Assembly: GCF_036588685.1 (NCBI RefSeq)
Contig: NC_086381.1
Location: 24,180,001-24,244,000 of the forward strand
DNA from: Mytilus trossulus
Lineage: Eukaryota
Direction: 5' to 3'
DNA length: 64,000 nucleotides
Shown here: piece after piece, positions 10,211 through 31,031 of the stretch
How the letters are laid out: every line of letters starts with the position of its first letter
Numbering within the stretch: position 1 is the first letter of the stretch
Notes under the pieces: generated by a model
Databases searched by the model: none
What the model was told of the DNA's origin: nothing
What the model saw: the letters and a program-made list of their open reading frames with translations, nothing else
Program-made: the position numbers and the translations under genes

Positions 10211-11533
10211 TTACTTATTTACATTATCAGCAATACAAGTTGGTTTCTTACTATCGTGACGACCATTATCCTCTAATCTCCACGAGACACGTTTCCTTTT
10301 CATTGGGCGTTTTCTCCTAGTACACTGATTGCAACCAGCAACATACATCCTAACGTCAGATTGCAAACCAGGCCAATAGAAAGACTGACGTATTTTTTCT
10401 ATAGTTTTATGTATACCTAGGTGACTTGCACACTTTGTCTCATGACAGCATTGTAAAACTTGCTTACGCTCCGACATAGGAATTACCGCTTGTAATTTCA
10501 CAATATTCCGTTCCCCGTCAACGTGGCGTCTAACTACTACGTCATCATGGACCTCTAAACAACCAAACTGACTCCATAATGACCTTATAGAGTATCCTTT
10601 ACCTGATACCTCATTGTACTGTGGCCTTTGACCCTCTGTCAACCACCGCTTAACAAGTTTAAGGTCCGAGTCATTTGACTGTAACTCATTTAAAGTCAAG
10701 TTTTTACCCATGTCTGGCATCTGACTTGTAACTAGGTTTACCTGACTTTGTTCTCTCTTAGAACAGTCACGGTCCGTTTTTGACTGTGTGTCTGATGTTA
10801 ACCGGCAAGATTTTTTACGAACATCAATATTCCTAATTTTGGTACCTTGAACACATAGGGGGACCTTGACGTTATCGATGTGTAATACGTTAGCAGACAC
10901 GTCAATCAAACACTTATTTTTCTTCATAAAGTCTAAACCTAGAATTCCTTCGACTTGTAGGTTAGTTACAACAGCCTCTGAAGTAAGCTTCTCTTGACCA
11001 AAATCAAGTGTAAAATTACCTTTTCCCCGAGGGCTTAAATACTTGTCACTGACGGACTTTATCTGTGACCTAGTTTTACTCAAATGCGGCCTACATAAGT
11101 CAGGAATTGAATCATATACTCTTGTAGAAACTAAAGTAAGTGTAGCTCCAGTATCAACCACAAATTTGACTGGTACACCTTGAATGCTCAGCTCAACAAA
11201 CATTCCTGCATTCTCTGATGCTGTAACAACAACAGCGCCTTTGTCATTATACTTAACCTCAGACTTCAGTGTCTTGACCGTACCGTCCGTATATGTTCCG
11301 TTATTATCTGTTTCCCGAGTACTAAGTATCTGAATATTATTGGGACAATTTCTTGCAAAGTGTCCTATTTCTTCACAACTAAAACAAGGACCACCCATGT
11401 TACCTTTACTTTGTAAGTTATTTATCTTTCTCCGTGGTTGGAACTTTCTTTGGGACTTTAAATCTTTAATCTCTTTTGTTAAGGATTGTATACTATTTTC
11501 AATTGTCTGCATCCACGTCGTCATTTGTTCCAT
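10211..11533 (-). CDS. Gag zinc knuckle + aspartic protease + integrase N-terminal HHCC zinc-binding domain; no RT, RNase H or integrase core
   Basis: CFSCEEIGHFARNC (CCHC); FVVDTGATLTL...GILGLDFM (retropepsin); H..SHLGIHKTIEKIRQSFYWPG..DVRMYVAGCNQC (integrase H2C2), then stop. Same frame as 11591-12340. Confidence 0.9.
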   Translation of the reverse strand: MEQMTTWMQTIENSIQSLTKEIKDLKSQRKFQPRRKINNLQSKGNMGGPCFSCEEIGHFARNCPNNIQILSTRETDNNGTYTDGTVKTLKSEVKYNDKGAVVVTASENAGMFVELSIQGVPVKFVVDTGATLTLVSTRVYDSIPDLCRPHLSKTRSQIKSVSDKYLSPRGKGNFTLDFGQEKLTSEAVVTNLQVEGILGLDFMKKNKCLIDVSANVLHIDNVKVPLCVQGTKIRNIDVRKKSCRLTSDTQSKTDRDCSKREQSQVNLVTSQMPDMGKNLTLNELQSNDSDLKLVKRWLTEGQRPQYNEVSGKGYSIRSLWSQFGCLEVHDDVVVRRHVDGERNIVKLQAVIPMSERKQVLQCCHETKCASHLGIHKTIEKIRQSFYWPGLQSDVRMYVAGCNQCTRRKRPMKRKRVSWRLEDNGRHDSKKPTCIADNVNK

Positions 11534-11590
11534 AGATACAGCCGTATCAGGACTAGTAGGTGCTTCTGTCCGTTCGTCACTAGTAGTCCG

Positions 11591-12340
11591 TCATAAGTGA
11601 CCTATACTTTCTATTGCTCTACTCTCAGCTTTGTTATATGCTTCAAGTTCAACTGCCAACCGTATAGCATCGTTAAGACCTTTTGGACGAGACTGTTTAA
11701 TTCTCAATCTCATTTCAGAGTCTACTAACGCATCTATAAATTGTTCTTTGGCGAGCGTGTCTCTTAATTCTAACGGAGCAGTCGGGTATGCCAGATTAGA
11801 AAGTCTTCGAACTGACTGACCTAACCCCGGCAAAGTGTCACTTGCTTTTTGTCGATATTCCTTGAATTGTACACGATACAGTTCAGTTTGACAAGATGGA
11901 GCAAAGCGTTCCTCCAATGCATATACTAGGTCTGAAAATATTTGTCTCTTTTCCTTTGGTAAATCACCAAGGACTGCTTGAGCCTTTCCAACCAGTGACA
12001 CGGCCAAGTACAAACCTTTCTGGTATTCAGACCACATATTAACAAGTGTACACATCTCAAAGTGTGCTAAGTAATCTATCCAAGGAGTATTGCCATCATA
12101 TTTTGAAGGTTTGATTTTCAAATCATTCGAACCAGAGCAAACAGTATGAGCAGTACTTTGATTTTTCGTTAATTCCTGCTTATGATTGAAATATCTATCT
12201 TTATCTTTAACAACCATTGGACGTACACCCTGCTCTTTAGGTGTAGATGATATAAAACCTTGTCCATGTTGTATTGTGCTTTCACTAAGAGACTGTATTT
12301 GTCTACTTATTTCTGCAATCTGATCGTCAATATTTGACAT
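11591..12340 (-). CDS. Gypsy Gag (capsid region)
   Basis: KPSKYDGNTPWIDYLAHFE...LAVSLVGKAQAVL...LEERF...RQKASDTL...LAYP...AKEQFIDAL; ends at one in-frame TGA 57 nt before the next ORF. Confidence 0.9.
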   Translation of the reverse strand: MSNIDDQIAEISRQIQSLSESTIQHGQGFISSTPKEQGVRPMVVKDKDRYFNHKQELTKNQSTAHTVCSGSNDLKIKPSKYDGNTPWIDYLAHFEMCTLVNMWSEYQKGLYLAVSLVGKAQAVLGDLPKEKRQIFSDLVYALEERFAPSCQTELYRVQFKEYRQKASDTLPGLGQSVRRLSNLAYPTAPLELRDTLAKEQFIDALVDSEMRLRIKQSRPKGLNDAIRLAVELEAYNKAESRAIESIGHL

Positions 12341-18639: not shown

Positions 18640-21600
18640 ATGGACGCCAAAGAGTTTAGAAAACGTGGACGAGAAATGGTAGATTACATCGCGGATTACC
18701 TCGAAAATATACGAGAACGTGACGTGGTTCACACCGTTTCTCCTGGATACCTTAAAGATCTCTTACCAGAAGAAGCACCTAAAGATCCAGAAAATTTTGA
18801 TGAAGTTTTCAAAGATATTGAACGAGTGATAATGCCCGGTGTATGTATTTCGTAGAAAGCTGCTCTTCTAACATTTGTTTTATAGCACATACAAGATACA
18901 TCTTTTATAGTTTAAAGAGAGATGTAACCTTTATTTGTTTCTCATCATTACGATGAATGTAGAAAGTGTATTTGTGTTTGTGTTTGTCTATTAATTTGCT
19001 CTATCCTAAATTAATGCGTTAGTTCGTAGACGTGTTGATTATCAAAGTGAGTTTAAGACATTGGTTAGTTACTGTTTCAAATTCCAGTGTTCCTGTTTTG
19101 AATTAACAATTAAATTTAGAAAAAATGATATCTTCTTTTATTTATTTTTCATTGAACAGTACTATAGAAGAAAGTTATTGAAATACATTATAATATAAGC
19201 CACTTACGATACATTCTATAAGAGAAGTCTAAGAAACGGCATACATGCTCATGTACTTGTGTTTCATCCGCTAAATTTATATTGCTGTAGTATGAAAGTT
19301 GGCATTCGATAATTATAATTGACAACTTTTGCAGGTAACGCATTGGCATAGTCCATATTTCCACGGATATTTTGCTCCTGGGAGTTCCTATCCATCCATT
19401 CTTGGTGACATGTTATCCGATGCTATTGGTTGTATTGGATTTTCTTGGGTAAGTTCTATATATCTTTAACATTTGTATGATTCATCTTAAATTTCTGGCA
19501 CATTCTTCTCTTCACTAAAACCAACCATATTTAGTTGCAATTCGTAGAGATAAAAAGATAATCGATGTGATCAAATTTAAAGAATGGACTGGTGCTCGGA
19601 ATATGGGAATAATCGAAGAAAAAACGATCCTATTTCGGAACATGCCACTGGCTTATTTTTAATCAAGACCGAAAACACATTGGCTTAAATGACTATAAAA
19701 ATAAATAGCATACGGTACCGCTTTATTCTATATCAAGATCTGAAAAAAGATGCTCATCTAACACCTATTTTTAAAATCTGACAAGACGGTAGTCATAAGG
19801 TAATCGTAGTATCTATGATGAGTTTATGTAGAACAAATGTGTGGCTCACATCTAACAGCAAGCTATTTAAGGTTTTCAAAATGACTAGTGTACAACAATT
19901 CAAACAGGGAAACCAATGGTCTATTTTTTTATAAAACGAGTGATGAGAAACACCTAAGAACCACACCAACAAACGGCTAACACTGAACAACAAAATATAA
20001 TCAGAAGTCCATCCTTTTTTTTTTTAGTTTATAATTTTTTTTTTCTTGTCTTTTAAAAATAAATGTTGAAAAAAATGTTATTTTGAAAACTATAAACATG
20101 TTTGCCTTTACAGGTGACAAGTCCTGCTTGTACAGAACTGGAAGTCGTCACCACAGACTGGCTCGGCAAAATGATAGGTCTGCCTGAAGAATTTCTACAC
20201 TGTACTGAAGGACCAGGGGGCGGAGTCATACAGGTCAGAACCATATTGAAGTTTTCTTGGCATTTATCTCTGATTGATTTTACCTTTCCTGCCTTAATAT
20301 TAACTTTTCTAGAAAATTATGAACCAATTATTATGAATATTCATATGCAGTTTAAGACACTTTTAATCTATTATTAAAAGAAAAAACATACAAAGGTAAA
20401 CAAAAGATACAATTACAGACACATGTACAAAATAATACAATGATTCTTAAGCAAAACCTATATTCATTTATTTATCAACTTTTCTTTATTTTTCGGGGTT
20501 TAAAGGGTTTGAGAAGTTTTTTACAGTGATCGTTTGTTTGTCAGCACTGAAATTAGCTTTTACTGAAATTGACAACACCAAAAATCAATTATCAAACTTT
20601 GTTTTTTAGTCCACAGCAAGTGAAACAGTCCTTTTATGTCTATTAGCAGCGAGAACCCGTATTGTTAATAAATACAAGAAAGAAAATCCAGAAATGAACG
20701 AAGTTGAGATCATGTCAAAACTTGTTGGTTACTGTTCTACACAGGTAAAATAATAACATTTCAAAATAAGATATAAAATAATAAACGATATTATGCAATG
20801 AATATCTGATACAACTCAAACTATCTATCAATTTGTTCTGAAATGTGAGGTTAAAAGCTAGGACAGCATTGTGATTTTGTACTTTTGCTTCTGTTTTTTT
20901 TTTGCAATCTTTACCAAAACAGTGGAAGAAAGCAACAAAGATACAAAATATTAATGTTCATAATGATAATTTCACATCTCATCAAACGGTGACTTTATAT
21001 ATATATATATATATATATTTTAGGCAAACTCGTCTGTTGAACGGTCTGGGCTGCTTGGAGCTGTACAAATGGTTAAGCTTATTCCTGACAGTAAACACAG
21101 CGTTCGAGGGGAGACGCTAAGACAAGCTATAAAACGGGATAAAGATAAAGGCAACATACCATTTTTTGTGAGTTATGTTACAAAGTTTATGAAATTTAAT
21201 GACAAGACAGAAAGTAAAACAAACGATAAAAAAGCGAATCGGTGTTAACACAAAAATAAAGGAAGAACGCAGTTATTGTTCTTTCAAAATTCACATGCTT
21301 TGATATTGTGACATTAATGCTCTATGTTTTATTCGTGCCTTTTTACAATCAGGGTTACATTTTGTAGCGAAACATTATATTGCGTCATAAATCAAGTGAT
21401 TTTTTTTTTGGGGGGGGGGGTGAAAGAAATGCTTTACGATTATGATTACTGTTGGTTGGAACCATTGTTCAGTTTCCTCTATTGTTAATTTACCCTTCCG
21501 GAGCACCTGAGATCACCCATAGTTTTTGGTGGGGTTCGTGTTGGTTATTCTTTAGTTTTCTATGTTGTGTCATGTGTACTATTGTTTTTCTGTTTGTCTT

Positions 21601-24600
21601 TTTCATTTTTAGCCATGGCGTTGTCAGTTTGTTTTAGATTTGCGAGTTTGACTGTCCCTTTGATATCTTTCGTCCCTCTTTTACATCAACATTATATCAT
21701 ATATTTATAATTTAATTCTTATCACAGATCTGCGTATCTTTGGGAACAACAGGAACATGTGCTTTTGACAACTTAGCAGAAATTGGACCTATCTGTAAGT
21801 AAGAATTTGGCATTTATTTAATTATTAATGGTGGTCCATATACTTTTGCGATATCAAATAAAATAATAAATAAAATACACCAACAAATTATGTGAGGTTT
21901 TTCAAAATTAATGATTAAACTTCCTTAAGTCATGACACAAAACTTACAAAAATGGTGGCACATTAACTATGTACTCTTGCCTAATGCACATTTCATACGG
22001 ATTTAAGGTAAATAATTTCGCTTTTTACTATTTCGGATTGATTGGTTAGACATTCACTTTAAGTTTATATGCATTACAGGCGAAGAGGAAGGTATATGGC
22101 TACATATAGACGCAGCTTATGCAGGCAGTGCCTTTGTTTGTCCAGAGTTCAGACATTACATGAAAGGAATAGAGGTAATATACGCATAGTCAATAACAGT
22201 TATGTTGCATATTATTTGGATTGTTAATACATTGTTCACGTGCATGGTGAAATGTAAGAGTCCATTTCTTCAGTCTTCAGAAGTATTAGAAGACCATCTT
22301 TAAATGAACCGAAAAACGAACTAAATTTTATTTTGAAAGAAAATATCCCGTCTGTTTAAAGATGTACGTCTTACACTCACACAGCTTTACAATTTGTCAA
22401 CGCCAAAGTTAATAAATATTAATGTCTTCTACCTTTCAGTATGCAGAGACTATTAGCATTAATCCACACAAATGGATGTTGATAAACTTCGACCTATCCG
22501 TAATGTGGTAAGTTTTACAGTGAACGAAAGTTTATTATCTATCAACGGCAAACCGATTGAGCCCATGTTGGTATCTAACCCGAAGTGAGTTCAAGGTGGC
22601 ACGGTAGTATTTCCTGGCCATAAGGGATAATGATAGCCATTTTAGAATTTTCACCACTTTCTAACACTGCAAAAAATTCTACATTCACAGTTAACTGAAG
22701 TACTTTTCTTTTACCATTCAGAAATGAATTTGGATATGTACCATGACCGTTTACTTTTTTTGCTATTTTTAAAATCCTAAGGCCACTAGTACTTTTAGGT
22801 CTTTTATGGTGCAGTGAATGCAAAATTTTAAAAAATTCTCAAAAATTCATTTTCATCTGTATATAAAATTATTTCATATTTTTCTACACCTGATTCATCA
22901 CTCAGTTTGGGAAAGTATGTTCATTTGATACTGTATTTTTTGTCCAATCACACTGTTTAGATACATTTACCTAAGTAGGGTACACAAAAGAGCAACCTAA
23001 ATTCTGGAAAGCAAATACTACCGTGCCACCTCAAGCACATACATATTAAATGTAATATGCAAAATAACAAAAGTAATTTCAAGAGGGAAAATCCGTAAAA
23101 CTGATAAAACTATAATAATCTGTGGAAACAACTGGCATATTCCTTCTTATTTCAGATCCTCAATGTCGTCCATCATCAGTGACCCCTTCGCTCCTATTTG
23201 AACCGTATAAATCATTTAAACTTATCGTGATCAGCCGGAACTATACTTATTATATTAAGTTTTTGCGTCAAATGTTTTCCTTATGCCATATCGGTTGGCA
23301 GTAAACTACACTACTACTTTAATGCGCTGTTGTGGTGGACAGTTGCATATACAACAATCGACTGTAATCTGTGGTGGTGATTTAGGATGTACAAATATCG
23401 TATCACTTAGTTTATTTCTAATTAAGATATGAAAAACAAAAACGGTTTTGTTGACATTGCTCGTGACGTCACATACCTATATGTTCTGTTTGGCTTTGCT
23501 TGGGTTTATAAAACGAGTTCTTAAACCATAGAGATAAAACTTTTAAACATCCTCCTTTATATTACTGACAATTGTGCAGAATGTACTACATGTATATCCT
23601 TTATCAACTCTTTCTCCAAAGGATAAAAGACAGCACACTATTAGTAGATGCTTTTAATGTTGATCCAGTTTACCTTAAACACGTGAACCAAGGAAAAGTG
23701 CCAGATTACAGGGTATGTAGAGTTTGGCCAAATTTTCTTATTGATTGGTTTTACAAGTTATCCTCCTTACCGTATTGAAAGTATCTGTGAAATAAGTCAA
23801 ATGTATTTATAAGAACTAAAAAAATTACATTACATAAGAATGTTATTAATGTTAATTAAAGGCAACAGTAGTATACCGCTGTTCAAAACTCTTAAATCTA
23901 TGGACAAAAAACAAAATCAGGGTAACAAACTAAAACTGAGGGAAACGCATTAAATATAAAACATTTAAAAGCCATGAATAGTTATTTCTCTTTCCGAAAG
24001 ACAATTAGCCAGTGAGTACGAGTCTAGCGCAGTAGAATTGATATCGGTAATGGGATTATTATAAACACTATAGATTACTGACAAGTTTGTTTTGTCAATT
24101 ACATTAACTTTCGAAAATCAGTATGAAGACAGAGAAAATCAAACAGAACGTTAAGGCATGCACGGAAACATTTGGTACAGAACAGGAGAAACAACCAACG
24201 GAACATTAAAGACATTCAATGAAATCTTTCGGCACAAGACAGTAGAGACAACCACAAACAAAATATTAAGACGTGTGTCGAAATCTTTCATCACAAAATA
24301 GGAGAGAGAACTAAAAAGAACATAAAGACGTGTTACCGATTCTTCCGGCACAGAACAGGGGAGAAAACCACAAACGAAACATTAAGACATGTGTCAAAAC
24401 CTTTCAAAATATAACAGGAGAGACATCCAACAAAACATTAAAGACATGTGTCAAAACCTTTCAAAATATAACAAGAGAGACAACCAACAAAACATTAAGA
24501 CATGTGTCAAAACCTTTCAAAATATAACAGGAGAGACATCCAACAAAACATTAAAGACATGTGTCAAAACCTTTCAAAATATAACAGGAGAGACAACCAA

Positions 24601-27600
24601 CAAAACATTAAGACATGTTTCAAAACCTTTCAAAATATAACAAGAGAGACATCCAACAAAACATTAAGACATGTGTCAAAACCTTTCAAAATATAACAGG
24701 AGAGACAAACAACAAAACATTAAGACATGTGTCAAAACCTTTCAAAATATAACAAGAGAGACATCCAACAAAACATTAAAGACATGTGTCAAAACCTTTC
24801 AAAATATAACAGGAGAGACAACCAACAAAACATTAAGACATGTGTCAAAACCTTTCAGAATATAACAGGAGAAACAACCAACAAAACATTAAGACATGTC
24901 TCAAAACCTTCCAGAATATAACAGGAGAAACAACCAACAAAACATTAAGACATGTCTCAAAACCTTTCAGAATATAACAGGAGAAACAACCAACAAAACA
25001 TTAAGACATGTCTCAAAACCTTTCAGAATATAACAGGAGAAACAACCAACAAAACATTAAGACATGTCTCAAAACCTTTCAAAATATAACAAGAGAGACA
25101 TCCAACAAAACATTAAGACATGTGTCAAAACCTTTCAAAATATAACAGGAGAGACATCCAACAAAACATTAAAGACATGTGTCAAAACCTTTCAAAATAT
25201 AACAGGAGAGACAACCAACAAAACATTAAGACATGTGTCAAAACCTTTCAGAATATAACAGGAGAGACAACCAACAAAACATTAAGACATGTGTCAAAAC
25301 CTTTCAGAATATAACAGGAGAAACAACCAACAAAACATTAAGACATGTCTCAAAACCTTCCAGAATATAACAGGAGAAACAACCAACAAAACATTAAGAC
25401 ATGTCTCAAAACCTTTCAGAATATAACAGGAGAAACAACCAACAAAACATTAAGACATGTCTCAAAACCTTTCAGAATATAACAGGAGAAACAACCAACA
25501 AAACATTAAGACATGTCTCAAAACCTTTCAGAATATAACAGGAGAAACAACCAACAAAACATTAAGACATGTGTCAAAACCTTTCAGAATATAACAGGAG
25601 AAACAACCAACAAAACATTAAGACATGTGTCAAAACCTTTCAGAATATAAGAGGAGAAACAACCAACAAAACATTAAGACATGTACTGAAATCTTTAGGC
25701 AAAAAACAGGAGAGACAACCAACAGAACATTAATTCAAGACAAGTGCTGAAATTTGTTGATAAAAACTACGGGAACCAAACAACCAGAACATTACAACAT
25801 GTCCCAGTATTGCATTGAAGCTTTAATTTTATCTCCATAGATGGGTATTTGTTTGAATTATTACAAATAGATTCAGTTGTCTTAAAATATGTTTTAACAA
25901 TTTAGAGATTCCATTAAGTGAACATTGCCGCTCAAAAAAGTGACAATGCTCTTTTAATTCTGATGGAGAAGTGTCTTTATAAAACCGATCTATATTTTGT
26001 TTTAGCACTGGCAGATTCCACTAGGACGCCGATTTCGATCTTTGAAATTATGGTTTATGCTTCGTTCATATGGTGTTTCAGGAGTTCAATCTTACATCAG
26101 GAAGGTACGACTGTCGTTATTGTTGTTTAATCGATTGTTAAACTAATTATGATTCACCACACCACAAAAGTACTGTGTTTTGAAAAAGATACTAGTAAAT
26201 CTTAATATTTATACTTTTTTCGAGATTTGTTTCACAAATTTTCTATATTCGTCCAAACTATAAGCCTGATATATGTGATGAGTTTTGTATGCGATATATA
26301 TTCAAAGCATATAAAAGAGCTTAATAATTTAGCAATCAACTTCTCTCAAAAACTAGAAAGAGCAAAAATATCTATTTTTGATTTGTAGAAAGAAACACAT
26401 TGTTAAAAAATACGTGTCACTCTTGTCTTATAAGGCATGTTTTTTTTTAAACTGCATTACTTAATAATTGTGATGATTAGTTTCTGGATTGTTTATTGCC
26501 TTTAAATGACTATTTTTTCAACAAACAGGCCACAGACCACAATTAAATTCTCTATTAGTTCTTTATAACGTTTTGTTTCATCAAAAAAATTGCTCCTAAT
26601 CATTTTGTCAAATTTTTTGTGTGTGTAAAGTACAGTTCTAGTCCAAAAATATATCCAACATTCAGAAAGATTGCTCCTCTGTATTTTACAAATTTAGCCA
26701 ATACACATCCATACCCCTAAGGACAAGTCAAAAGATGTTCCGAAAACTGTAAATATCACCTTTTTGCACCTGGCCTAATCACTCTTTCCATATCAAAATC
26801 AGTGAAAATGAAACATCCAAAAGTTTATTTTAGCTATCTTCTTTCATTTCCATCCGAGAAAAGCTAAGAAATGTATGAGAAAGGGAAAGAAAAAAAATAA
26901 AGAAAAAATGCACTATAATCAAAGGGAACTATATTTCGACAACGAAAAGCGGGATCATTAATTGTGGTCTTGGGCCAACAATTGTCATTCCAATGATAAC
27001 CATTTGTGATCTTGTCGACTTGTTCCCTTAATCGTATTATGCAAACTTTGTATAGGAGCTTATAAGTCAGTATGATAAGAATATAGCTTATCGTCACGTT
27101 CTGCTTCATATATTGCGTCCTCCCACTCAAAGTTTCGTTTCTATGCTGAACGCATTTATCGAACTTGAAATAAAGGATACGCCAGATACAGTAAAAACTG
27201 TCTTATTGGGAATCGGGGAGCAAAACTTTATGCTAAAAAAAAGAAGATGTCAGCTTCATCCATTGTGAACTTTCCATTTCTATATTCTAGCAGCTGCTGT
27301 AAATACATATCTCCCAAATTATACGATATTACAGAGCTGGGATGTTCTATGTATCACGATTTCCTCGATAGATGTTGGTTGTTTACATATAAGCTGTTAC
27401 AGAAATTAATCTACATCGAATTCCTTTTGATTTTGAACGATTTTCTTAATTTTGTAGCATGTTAACTTGGCAAAGCAATTTGAAAAGTTAGCAAGAGAAG
27501 ATGGACGTTTTGAGATAGTTGCAGAAGTTGTTATGGGACTTGTTTGTTTTAAATTAAAAGTAAGTAAGGATTAAATTCACGTGTTATTCCGTTAGCAACT

Positions 27601-28265
27601 TATCAACAACTTATCTAGCTTTGTATAAATTAGAGTTAAATTTGTTGTAATTCAACTACTTTTATCTTCGTAGTTACTCAACTAGTGTTTTAAAGATTTG
27701 AGCATTACTACCATAAAAACAATTTCCCCAGACTTTTAAATGATAAATATTTTTAAACTTTTTCTTGGCAGATTTAAAAAAAAAACATTTAAAAAAAAAA
27801 AACATTATTGATGTTTGAAATGTTTTCTTTAAAGTCAAATTAAGTACATAAACATAATTCATATGGTTAGATAGATAGCTGTTGTTATTTCCACGTATAA
27901 TTGATTAGTCATTATTATCAATGGCTTATATTAATATAAACATTTATTTCGTAATTAAATTTTAGGGTCCAAATGAACTTAATGAAAAACTGATGGAAGA
28001 AATCATTGAAGACAAGCGGATATTCCTCATTCCGGCATTTGACAAAAACGTGTATTTCCTCCGCTTTGCCGTATGTGCAGAACGTACAAATTCTAAAGAT
28101 GTAGACTATTCCTTTAGTGTAATCAGAGATTGTGCTAATAATGTGTTGGCTGTGCATTCAAAGACTCCATTGAAACATACCCCAGTTGTTGTTGATATTG
28201 ACCAACAGCCAAGATATAAAGGAAAGATGATAAGTCATAATCAGGACTTTGACGACGAGATTTAG
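18640..28265 (+). CDS. Aromatic L-amino acid decarboxylase family protein (group II PLP enzyme; DDC-like, with Asn192 as in DHPAA synthase/amd), 511 aa, 12 coding exons
   Basis: Exons 18640-18840, 19335-19448, 20114-20233, 20610-20744, 21024-21167, 21728-21794, 22080-22174, 22440-22507, 23622-23712, 26006-26104, 27458-27559, 27966-28265; all GT-AG, in frame, no stops. Motifs: [37 protein letters not shown] (D271), NPHKW (PLP K303), DPVYLKH (Y332), [16 protein letters not shown]. Confidence 0.95.
21490..21685 (+). repeat. Dispersed repeat (retroelement 3' end / SINE-like) in DDC intron 5
   Basis: tacccttccggagcacctgagatcacc...gccatggcgttgtcagtttgtt...gagtttgactgtccctttgatatctttcgtccctctttta; related tails at ~1045-1190, 2280-2380, 30330-30440, 44800-44870. 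Confidence 0.7.
22595..23030. mobile_element. MITE with perfect 18-bp TIRs and TCAA target duplication (DDC intron 8)
   Basis: tcaa|GGTGGCACGGTAGTATTT ... AAATACTACCGTGCCACC|tcaa. Confidence 0.9.
24146..25800. repeat. 56/57-bp minisatellite in DDC intron 9 (~23 homogeneous copies at 24378-25690 with degenerate flanking units)
   Basis: Unit aacattaagacatgtgtcaaaacctttcaaaatataacaggagagacaaccaacaa; accounts for the repetitive ORFs at 24330-25314. Confidence 0.95.
27160..27400 (+). mobile_element. Degenerate Penelope-like RT fragment (DDC intron 10)
   Basis: Frames give [20 protein letters not shown], YISxxIRYYRA and YHDFLDR, recognisable as the RT/thumb region of Penelope-like elements; frameshifted. 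Confidence 0.55.
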
Positions 28266-30501: not shown

Positions 30502-31031
30502 AGATTACCTTAGCCGTATTTTGCACAACTTTTTGTAATTTTGAATCCTTAATGCTCTTCAACTTTGTACTTGTTTGGCTTCATAATATAAATATTTTGA
30601 TATGAGCGTCACTGATTAGTCTTATGTAGACGAAAACGCCTCTGGTGTACTAAATTATAATCCTGGTAACTATTTACACCACTGGGTCGATGCCACTGAT
30701 GATGGACGTTTCGTCCCCGAGGGTATCACCAGCCCAGTAGTCAACACTTCGGTGTAGTCATGAATATCAATAATGTGGTATTTTTTATAAATTTCCTGTT
30801 TACAAATCTTTGAATTTTTCGAAAAACTATGGATTTTCTTATCCCAGGCATAGTTGATCAAAGCCGTATTTGGCACAACTTTTTGGAATTTTGAATCTCC
30901 AATGCTCTTCAACTTTGTACTTGTGTGGCTTTATAATATAAATATTTTGATATGAGAGTCACTGATGAGTCTTATGTAGACGAAACGCGCCTCTGGCGTA
31001 CCAAATTATAATCCTGGTACCTTTGATAACT
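30502..31031 (+). ncRNA. Non-LTR retrozyme locus: ~1.5 tandem copies of a 350-bp monomer, each with a type I hammerhead ribozyme motif
   Basis: Cores at 30612 (CTGATTA gtc ttatgta gac GAAAA) and 30962 (CTGATGA gtc ttatgta gac GAAA cgcgc CTC tggcgt), exactly 350 bp apart; 30512-30668 is repeated at 30862-31019. Confidence 0.85.

What the first reader, a model, noticed from the sequence alone, without database searches (positions are those of the whole stretch)
21024..21050. DDC-like enzyme has Asn192 instead of His192: candidate molluscan DOPA-aldehyde (DHPAA) synthase
Seen: exon 5 begins tag|GCA AAC TCG TCT GTT GAA CGG = A-N-S-S-V-E-R. Counting through the spliced exons (67+38+40+45 aa) places this Asn at residue 192 (codon 21027-21029), and D271, K303 and Y332 fall at the same numbers as in mammalian DDC. 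Known: DDC, HDC and TDC have AHSSVE, where His192 stacks on PLP. Insect 3,4-dihydroxyphenylacetaldehyde synthases (Drosophila amd and relatives) have Asn there, which switches the chemistry to decarboxylation-oxidative deamination (aldehyde + NH3 + H2O2) used in cuticle cross-linking. Inference: this intact 12-exon gene encodes an aldehyde synthase in a bivalve, where catechol chemistry underlies byssus and periostracum hardening. I know of no description of such an enzyme in molluscs, and automated annotation would call it plain DDC.
Basis: partly seen in the sequence, partly recalled or inferred. Interest (0 to 1): 0.9.

Follow-up and report, generated by a model that had tools for sequence, protein, structure and literature searches.

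The report
Bivalve DDC-like enzyme with Asn192
A mussel gene for a DOPA-decarboxylase-like enzyme has an asparagine where a catalytic histidine normally sits, the change that turns such enzymes into aldehyde makers in insects and some plants. The same change is kept in ark clams and freshwater mussels, so bivalves probably have an undescribed aromatic aldehyde synthase, though no activity has been measured.

Summary
Window 18640-28265 (+) holds an intact 12-exon, 511-aa group II PLP decarboxylase gene. Exon 5 starts at 21024, and codon AAC (21027-21029) puts Asn opposite His192 of pig and human DDC. D271, K303 and Y332 are in register.

The genome is a Mytilus. It also has His-type DDC-like, HDC and TDC-like genes, so this is a fourth paralogue.

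Asn192 is neither an assembly error nor a private allele. Orthologues in Sinanodonta woodiana (514 aa, 72-74% identical), Potamilus streckersoni and Tegillarca granosa, and at least five unnamed lineages, all carry the same Asn plus clade-specific changes (ERSG, YFA[AP]G, YAET). No window-like sequence has His. An intron-free contig shows the ark-clam orthologue is transcribed.

The clade is well supported (100/100) and separate from beetle DHPAAS in the best tree, but a single origin of Asn is not statistically rejected (AU p 0.21). It lacks the insect extras (F79-Y80, R330), and Thr82 is lost, so the substrate is uncertain.

An aldehyde-synthase or bifunctional activity is the best-supported reading (about 0.55) but is untested. 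The byssus link is weak, because freshwater mussels and the ark clam keep the gene too. No paper found describes such an enzyme in molluscs.

The parts
18640..18840 (+). Exon 1 (aa 1-67), starting at ATG 18640
   Evidence: The N-terminus [28 protein letters not shown] matches the Sinanodonta orthologue. Pfam PF00282 begins at aa 35.
19335..19448 (+). Exon 2 (aa 68-105). It holds W71, Y79-F80 (19368-19373) and the unusual A81-P82 (19374-19379), where DDC has P81-T82.
   Evidence: PF00282 hit.
20114..20233 (+). Exon 3 (aa 106-145)
20610..20744 (+). Exon 4 (aa 146-190), with the phosphate-binding T147-A148-S149
21024..21167 (+). Exon 5 (aa 191-238), the exon of the finding
21027..21029 (+). Codon AAC = Asn192, in place of the small-loop catalytic His192
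   Evidence: Conserved in the orthologues.
21728..21794 (+). Exon 6 (aa 239-261, ending in phase 1), with T246
22080..22174 (+). Exon 7 (aa 261-292), with D271 (22109-22111) and A273
22440..22507 (+). Exon 8 (aa 293-315, ending in phase 2), with N300, H302 and the PLP lysine K303 (22470-22472) in NPHKW
23622..23712 (+). Exon 9 (aa 315-345): the catalytic loop with V328, P330 and Y332 (23671-23673)
26006..26104 (+). Exon 10 (aa 346-378). HWQIPLG carries Gly352 (26024-26026), the equivalent of DDC Gly354.
27458..27559 (+). Exon 11 (aa 379-412)
27966..28265 (+). Exon 12 (aa 413-511 plus the TAG stop), including a tail of about 35 aa beyond the DDC core

Best explanation
The gene encodes a cytosolic, PLP-dependent enzyme built on a DOPA-decarboxylase scaffold. 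[quoted passage not shown] Shown here: every PLP-binding and catalytic residue is kept (K303, D271, A273, T246, N300, H302, S149, loop Y332) except the small-loop His192, which is Asn in all orthologues. The protein is almost as conserved between bivalve orders as HDC. Inferred: in DDC, His192 works with Tyr332 to protonate the carbanion that forms after CO2 loss. With Asn there the intermediate is instead attacked by O2. The enzyme would then carry out decarboxylation and oxidative deamination, releasing an aromatic acetaldehyde, NH3 and H2O2, either exclusively or mixed with some amine. The substrate is probably a phenolic or catecholic amino acid (L-DOPA or L-tyrosine), because Gly occupies the DDC Gly354 position. 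It is uncertain because Thr82 and Pro81 are replaced. The reactive aldehyde could serve in cross-linking of organic matrices common to bivalves, such as periostracum or shell matrix; that last step is speculation.
For: - The gene is intact and numbers like DDC.
- Asn lies opposite His192 of solved DDCs.
- The active-site table shows all other PLP and catalytic residues present, with Gly at the Gly354 position.
- Orthologues carry the identical [15 protein letters not shown]: Sinanodonta woodiana (514 aa, full length), Potamilus streckersoni and Tegillarca granosa, plus the unnamed lineages P0012/P0151, P0014/P0152/P0153, P0278, P0279 and P0297.
- Mytilus versus Sinanodonta is 74% identical over 488 aa, against 76-81% for HDC between bivalve orders. 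This indicates strong purifying selection.
- The bivalve Asn clade has 100/100 support.
- A 1397-bp contig carries exons 1-6 without introns and is 97% identical to the Tegillarca protein, which is transcript evidence.
- His-type DDC-like, HDC and TDC-like genes exist in the same genome, so amine synthesis is covered elsewhere.
- Literature: Asn192 is the key DHPAAS residue, and N192H cuts aldehyde-synthase share to 22%. The Y79-F80 + Asn192 combination (BmDHPAAS F79Y-Y80F) still gives 67% aldehyde-synthase activity (PMC6494836).
- N192L abolishes activity, and Y332 is required (PMC13651850).
- In plants, PsTyDC H205N becomes bifunctional, and the natural Asn enzyme EgPAAS is an exclusive aldehyde synthase (bioRxiv 10.1101/404970).
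Against: - There is no enzymology for any member.
- The clade lacks the other insect DHPAAS features. It has Y79-F80 rather than F79-Y80 or Y79-Y80, and P330 rather than R330 (R330P lowers DmDHPAAS kcat about 5-fold).
- Thr82 is Pro or Ala and Pro81 is Ala, so DOPA binding may be altered.
- Two natural plant His-to-Asn proteins (MmAAS, LiAAS) showed little or no activity.
Confidence: 0.55

Rival explanations
1. It is an ordinary amine-forming decarboxylase that has changed substrate. Asn192 is tolerated or compensated by the co-evolved pocket changes (A81, A/P82, G83, S198, E295-T296), and the product is a trace amine or another amine rather than an aldehyde.
For: The pocket differs from DDC at several substrate-contacting positions, and positions 82-83 (Ala/Pro, then Gly) resemble the TDC state PAG. 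The DDC-type Y79-F80, P330 and Y332 are kept. Engineered His-to-Asn enzymes retain part of their decarboxylase activity.
Against: In every enzyme where this position has been tested, loss of His raises the oxidative deamination share and Asn supports it. The genome already has His-type DDC-like, HDC and TDC-like genes. A strictly conserved Asn across bivalve orders argues that it is functionally selected.
Confidence: 0.28
2. It is a weakly active or non-catalytic family member, for example a PLP-binding or regulatory protein, or an H2O2 generator of low turnover, kept for a reason other than its organic product.
For: Two natural plant Asn variants had little or no activity. Insect DHPAAS is itself slow, with kcat about 6 per min.
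Against: All PLP-binding and catalytic residues other than His192 are kept. Conservation is close to that of HDC. This pattern is typical of an active enzyme.
Confidence: 0.12
3. AAC is an assembly error, a private allele, or the mark of a decaying pseudogene.
For: A single A/C difference separates AAC from CAC. Reads could not be inspected.
Against: The reading frame and all splice sites are intact. The same Asn occurs in independent assemblies and annotations of three other named bivalve species and in several unnamed lineages, and no window-like sequence has His.
Confidence: 0.02

Closest known systems
Insect 3,4-dihydroxyphenylacetaldehyde synthase (DHPAAS; Drosophila amd, PDB 6JRL; Aedes and Bombyx DHPAAS)
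   Same: Same fold and family (PF00282). Asn at position 192. Loop Tyr332 and the Gly of the DDC Gly354 position are kept. Length is about 510 aa with no signal peptide. It sits beside a canonical His192 DDC in the same genome.
   Different: It is not in the beetle DHPAAS clade in the best tree, though the AU test does not reject a joint clade (p 0.205). The bivalve orthologue scores higher against Drosophila DDC (677 bits) than against Drosophila DHPAAS (560 bits). It lacks F79-Y80 or Y79-Y80 and R330-I331. It has its own set of changes (A81, A/P82, G83, S146, S198, E295-T296). The product and substrate are unknown.
Canonical DOPA decarboxylase / AADC (pig 1JS3, human 3RBF, Drosophila 3K40)
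   Same: These are the best PDB sequence matches. The numbering is identical up to residue 335. NPHKW, Y79-F80, P330, Y332 and Gly354 are in the DDC state. The intron positions are the same as in the genome's own DDC-like gene.
   Different: His192 is Asn. P81-T82-A83 is A-P/A-G. The catalytic loop is two residues shorter than in human DDC. The own-genome DDC-like gene is only about 62% identical.
Plant small-loop His-to-Asn aromatic acetaldehyde synthases (Eucalyptus grandis EgPAAS; engineered PsTyDC H205N)
   Same: The same single-residue route to aldehyde synthesis on an otherwise decarboxylase-like scaffold that keeps the loop Tyr.
   Different: These belong to a separate kingdom and clade (PDB plant enzymes score 370-450 bits against 640-680 for animal DDC). 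The plant substrates are Phe or Tyr. Some natural plant Asn variants are inactive.

Membership tests
Group II PLP-dependent decarboxylases (Pfam PF00282 Pyridoxal_deC) | Significant match to the PF00282 profile | tested here: met
   Exon-wise hits on C9. Exons 5, 7 and 10 score above the cut-off alone. Orthologue P0334 scores 529 bits over profile positions 1-375.
Group II PLP-dependent decarboxylases (Pfam PF00282 Pyridoxal_deC) | Schiff-base lysine and the Asp that pairs with the pyridine nitrogen | tested here: met
   K303 lies in NPHKW and D271 in HIDAAYAG.
Canonical DDC/AADC | Small-loop catalytic His192 (AHSSVE) | tested here: not met
   Asn192 in the window and in all orthologues.
Canonical DDC/AADC | DDC-type marks NPHKW and Gly354, as against NPSKW/Ser in HDC and NPNKW/Ser in TDC | tested here: met
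Canonical DDC/AADC | Placement among DDC sequences in a tree | tested here: inconclusive
   It is on the DDC side of the well-supported TDC+HDC split (100/97). However, it forms a separate long-stemmed clade whose position relative to the other DDCs is unresolved. Few canonical DDCs could be sampled.
Insect DHPAAS (amd) | Asn192 | tested here: met
Insect DHPAAS (amd) | Phe79-Tyr80 or Tyr79-Tyr80 motif (PMC6494836) | tested here: not met
   It has Tyr79-Phe80, the DDC state. The same paper notes Tyr79-Phe80 in some lepidopteran and ant DHPAAS.
Insect DHPAAS (amd) | Catalytic-loop Tyr332 kept, and Gly at the 353/354 position | tested here: met
Insect DHPAAS (amd) | Descent from the insect amd lineage | tested here: inconclusive
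   In the ML tree the beetle Asn clade (100/99) groups with cricket DDC-like sequences (86/77), apart from the bivalve clade. The AU test of one Asn clade gives p 0.205 and does not reject it. The literature reports DHPAAS absent from non-insect arthropods (PMC13651850).
Insect DHPAAS (amd) | Makes DHPAA, NH3 and H2O2 from L-DOPA | not testable with these tools
   This needs recombinant enzyme assays.

The most novel reading that the evidence does not exclude
Bivalves independently evolved, several hundred million years ago on my rough estimate of the Pteriomorphia-Palaeoheterodonta split, a dedicated aromatic aldehyde synthase. It would make DOPAL or 4-hydroxyphenylacetaldehyde plus H2O2, and the product would cross-link periostracum, shell organic matrix or byssus. 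That would be an aldehyde-based sclerotization chemistry outside insects. It would also mean that DHPAAS-type chemistry, and sensitivity to DHPAAS-targeted insecticides, is not insect-specific.
Probability: 0.2. Interest if true: 0.8.

Novelty: new variant of a known kind. Interest (0 to 1): 0.6.

Why it matters
DHPAAS has just been presented as insect-specific and therefore as a selective insecticide target (PMC13651850). A strictly conserved Asn192 paralogue in marine and freshwater bivalves would question that claim. It would raise a non-target concern for aquatic molluscs. It would be a third independent use, after insects and Myrtaceae, of the same one-residue switch from amine to aldehyde chemistry. 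It would also give a concrete enzyme candidate for free reactive catechol or phenol aldehydes in bivalve hardening chemistry, which has so far been explained by peptidyl-DOPA and tyrosinases. The test is cheap: one recombinant protein, one point mutant and a peroxide assay.

Tried and rejected
There is therefore no read-level check of the AAC codon and no Mytilus RNA evidence.
- The joined spliced protein was never sent to any database, fold or structure tool. Those searches were made exon by exon by reference. The joined translation was built only inside scripts from window.fa, for numbering, local BLAST, alignment and trees.
- A single-exon search of the 5.8-billion-protein set found only P0001.
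- A search with the Haliotis protein P0095 returned only HDC orthologues.
- I tried mixing exon references with full-length backbones into one profile. MAFFT scattered the fragments (A1). Local simulations showed that even the window protein itself would rank below more than 100 HDC or arthropod DDC hits, so I dropped this.
- The protein Atlas gave only the family.
- The AU test could not reject a single Asn clade, so convergence with insects is favoured but not proven.
- Structure prediction was not run. It would only confirm the fold, and the tool gives no active-site geometry.
- Rejected readings: pseudogene or assembly error (intact frame, conserved orthologues); HDC or TDC identity (NPHKW and Gly rather than NPSKW/NPNKW and Ser); a byssus-specific role (unionids and the ark clam keep the gene).
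Full report
**Observation.** The window reads ttttag|GCA AAC TCG TCT GTT GAA CGG from 21024, which translates to [14 protein letters not shown].... From open frames and splice sites I rebuilt the whole gene. It lies on the + strand and has 12 exons:

| Exon | Window coordinates |
|---|---|
| 1 | 18640-18840 |
| 2 | 19335-19448 |
| 3 | 20114-20233 |
| 4 | 20610-20744 |
| 5 | 21024-21167 |
| 6 | 21728-21794 |
| 7 | 22080-22174 |
| 8 | 22440-22507 |
| 9 | 23622-23712 |
| 10 | 26006-26104 |
| 11 | 27458-27559 |
| 12 | 27966-28265 |

Every intron is bounded by GT and AG. The CDS is 1536 nt and encodes 511 aa with no internal stop. Exons 1-4 give 190 aa, so Asn192 is codon 21027-21029.

**A limit on method.** The joined spliced protein was not sent to any database, fold or structure tool. 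Those searches were made exon by exon, by reference. The joined translation was built only inside scripts from window.fa, for numbering, local BLAST, alignments and trees.

**Organism and paralogues.** The window is C9:24180001-24244000 of a 1.3-Gb genome. The genome's HDC gene is 98.6% identical to Mytilus galloprovincialis HDC and about 99% identical to the available exons of M. coruscus HDC. The animal is therefore a Mytilus mussel; the species was not determined.

PF00282 and exon-5 searches of the whole genome, followed by retrieval of the loci, show three other aromatic-type decarboxylase genes:

| Locus | Type | Position-192 motif | Lysine motif | Residue at DDC Gly354 position |
|---|---|---|---|---|
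| C2:60.47 Mb | DDC-like | SHSSVERAG | NPHKW | Gly (HWHIPLG) |
| C5:15.52 Mb | HDC | AHSSVEKAG | NPSKW | Ser |
| C12:26.77-26.81 Mb | TDC-like | AHSCVEKAG | NPNKW | Ser |

All three have His at position 192. The window gene is the only Asn-type copy. It shares its intron positions with the DDC-like and HDC genes.

The question was answered through orthologues instead. A search of 1.84 billion representative proteins with exon 5 gave mostly single-exon fragments. Of the 150 listed, 120 have His and 8 have Asn. The Asn hits fall into two groups:
- An insect DHPAAS-like group with DQSNSS[VI]EKAGLLGSVPMRLLP.
- A window-like group with [AS]NSSV.RSG.

A profile of the window-like fragments (A2) was then searched, and the clusters were looked up. 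This produced named orthologues:
- Potamilus streckersoni KAK3593992.1 (148 aa).
- Sinanodonta woodiana KAL3842807.1 (514 aa, full length).
- Tegillarca granosa KAJ8299366.1 (426 aa, partial).

It also produced a 1397-bp contig (P0277) that carries exons 1-6 without introns and is 97% identical to the Tegillarca protein. That is evidence that the ark-clam orthologue is transcribed.

All of these read [15 protein letters not shown] at the site. Further unnamed Asn lineages are P0012/P0151, P0014/P0152/P0153, P0278, P0279 and P0297. No window-like sequence has His.

The Mytilus protein is 72% (MAFFT) to 74% (BLAST) identical to the Sinanodonta protein over its whole length. HDC between bivalve orders is 76-81% identical. 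The paralogue is therefore under purifying selection nearly as strong as that on a neurotransmitter enzyme. It predates the split of Pteriomorphia (mussels, ark clams) and Palaeoheterodonta (unionids).

**Position in the family.** In ML trees the three bivalve Asn proteins form a clade with 100/100 support and a long stem (0.33). They lie on the DDC side of the well-supported TDC+HDC split (100/97). Their position relative to the other DDC-type sequences is unresolved.

Beetle Asn-type sequences, recovered as halves of fused public gene models, form their own clade (100/99). That clade groups with cricket DDC-like sequences (86/77). Forcing all Asn sequences into one clade costs 9.9 log-likelihood units, but the AU test does not reject it (p 0.205).

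The Sinanodonta orthologue scores 677 bits against Drosophila DDC, 642 against human and pig DDC, 604 against human HDC and 560 against Drosophila DHPAAS. DHPAAS is reported to be absent from non-insect arthropods (PMC13651850), and the accompanying substitutions differ between insects and bivalves. Together these favour an independent origin of Asn192 in bivalves. I put that at about 0.8, but it is not proven with the sampling I could reach.

**Active-site anatomy.**
- Kept: W71, I101, F103, the T/S147-A148-S149 phosphate loop, T246, D271, A273, N300, H302, K303, V328, Y332, the Gly of the DDC Gly354 position, and the LRFA arginine.
- Changed in the whole bivalve clade relative to DDC: H192N, A198S (ERSG), P81A, T82A/P, A83G (YFA[AP]G instead of YFPTA), A78G, G146S, D295E and S296T (YAET).
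- Absent insect DHPAAS marks: the clade has Y79-F80 rather than F79-Y80 or Y79-Y80, and P330 rather than R330-I331.

The protein is thus a DDC scaffold with Asn192 and a remodelled substrate pocket, not a copy of the insect enzyme. It starts MDAKEF, like cytosolic DDC, and has no N-terminal extension relative to DDC, so it is presumably cytosolic. No signal-peptide predictor was run.

- Asn192 against His192 decides DHPAAS against DDC chemistry (PMC12078590).
- In Bombyx DHPAAS, N192H drops the aldehyde-synthase share to 22%. The F79Y-Y80F variant, which has the residue combination found here, keeps 67% (PMC6494836).
- N192L and Y332F abolish DmDHPAAS activity, and R330P lowers kcat about five-fold (PMC13651850).
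- In plants, PsTyDC H205N becomes bifunctional and the natural Asn enzyme EgPAAS is an exclusive aldehyde synthase. Two other natural Asn proteins were nearly inactive (bioRxiv 10.1101/404970).

By inference, the bivalve enzyme decarboxylates its substrate. Lacking the His that helps protonate the carbanion, it lets O2 add instead. This yields an aromatic acetaldehyde, NH3 and H2O2, possibly together with some amine.

The substrate is open. Gly at the 354 position points to DOPA or another phenolic substrate. Loss of Thr82, giving a TDC-like Ala-Gly at 82-83 in most members, points away from a strict catechol preference. I give about 0.55 to substantial aldehyde-synthase activity, 0.28 to an amine-forming decarboxylase with a new substrate, 0.12 to a weakly active or non-catalytic role, and 0.02 to an artefact.

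**Biological role.** If the product is a cross-linker, a structure common to bivalves, such as periostracum or shell organic matrix, is the better guess. This is speculation, because no tissue data were obtainable.

**Novelty.** Full-text searches found no description of a molluscan aldehyde synthase or DHPAAS-like enzyme. Public records name the orthologues 'hypothetical protein' or 'Aromatic-L-amino-acid decarboxylase'. The kind of enzyme, a small-loop His-to-Asn aldehyde synthase, is known from insects and plants. A conserved bivalve lineage with a different set of accompanying residues is a new variant, and its function is still to be shown.

**Earlier scan notes.** A note on the same window (s1-827126) lists the same hybrid residue set (Y79-F80, N192, Y332, G352) and suggests mixed dopamine and DHPAA output. 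I verified the residues. The mixed-output idea agrees with the engineered-variant data but is untested.

**Verdict.** It is of moderate to high interest because it can be tested directly and bears on the claimed insect specificity of DHPAAS.

Noticed in passing
window 24181-25733 (intron 9 of the gene): A tandem array of a 56-bp unit, 27.5 copies, 91% matches. It produces the long run of overlapping open frames seen in all three + frames. It lies wholly inside the intron.
   Followed up: partly
G000 C2:60469000-60488000, C5:15518000-15537900, C12:26770000-26808000: The genome's other aromatic-type decarboxylase genes are a DDC-like, an HDC and a TDC-like gene. All have His192, and the DDC-like and HDC genes share intron positions with the window gene. 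The TDC-like gene has an intron of about 14 kb inside what is exon 3 in the window gene.
   Followed up: partly
public proteins P0170 (Abscondita terminalis), P0200 (Phaedon cochleariae), P0181 (Gryllus bimaculatus), P0164 (Dufourea novaeangliae), P0208 (Timema monikensis): These are insect gene models of 850-1040 aa that fuse two tandem decarboxylase genes into one protein. Some halves carry Asn192 (DHPAAS-like). They are annotation merges, not real fusions.
   Followed up: partly
public protein P0338 (Tegillarca granosa KAJ8299366.1) against contig-derived P0277: The annotated ark-clam orthologue lacks 12 residues at the end of exon 1, the whole catalytic-loop exon (exon 9) and part of exon 11. 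The transcript-like contig P0277 contains the exon-1 piece. The public model is therefore incomplete.
   Followed up: partly
window 1-64000, including 30502-31031: An Rfam scan at gathering thresholds found no RNA family anywhere in the window. Another first-stage note (s1-827528) places a hammerhead retrozyme at 30502-31031; I did not test this at laxer thresholds.
   Followed up: no
window 10211-12340: Another first-stage note (s1-827529) reports a young LTR element here, upstream of the gene. I did not examine it.
   Followed up: no
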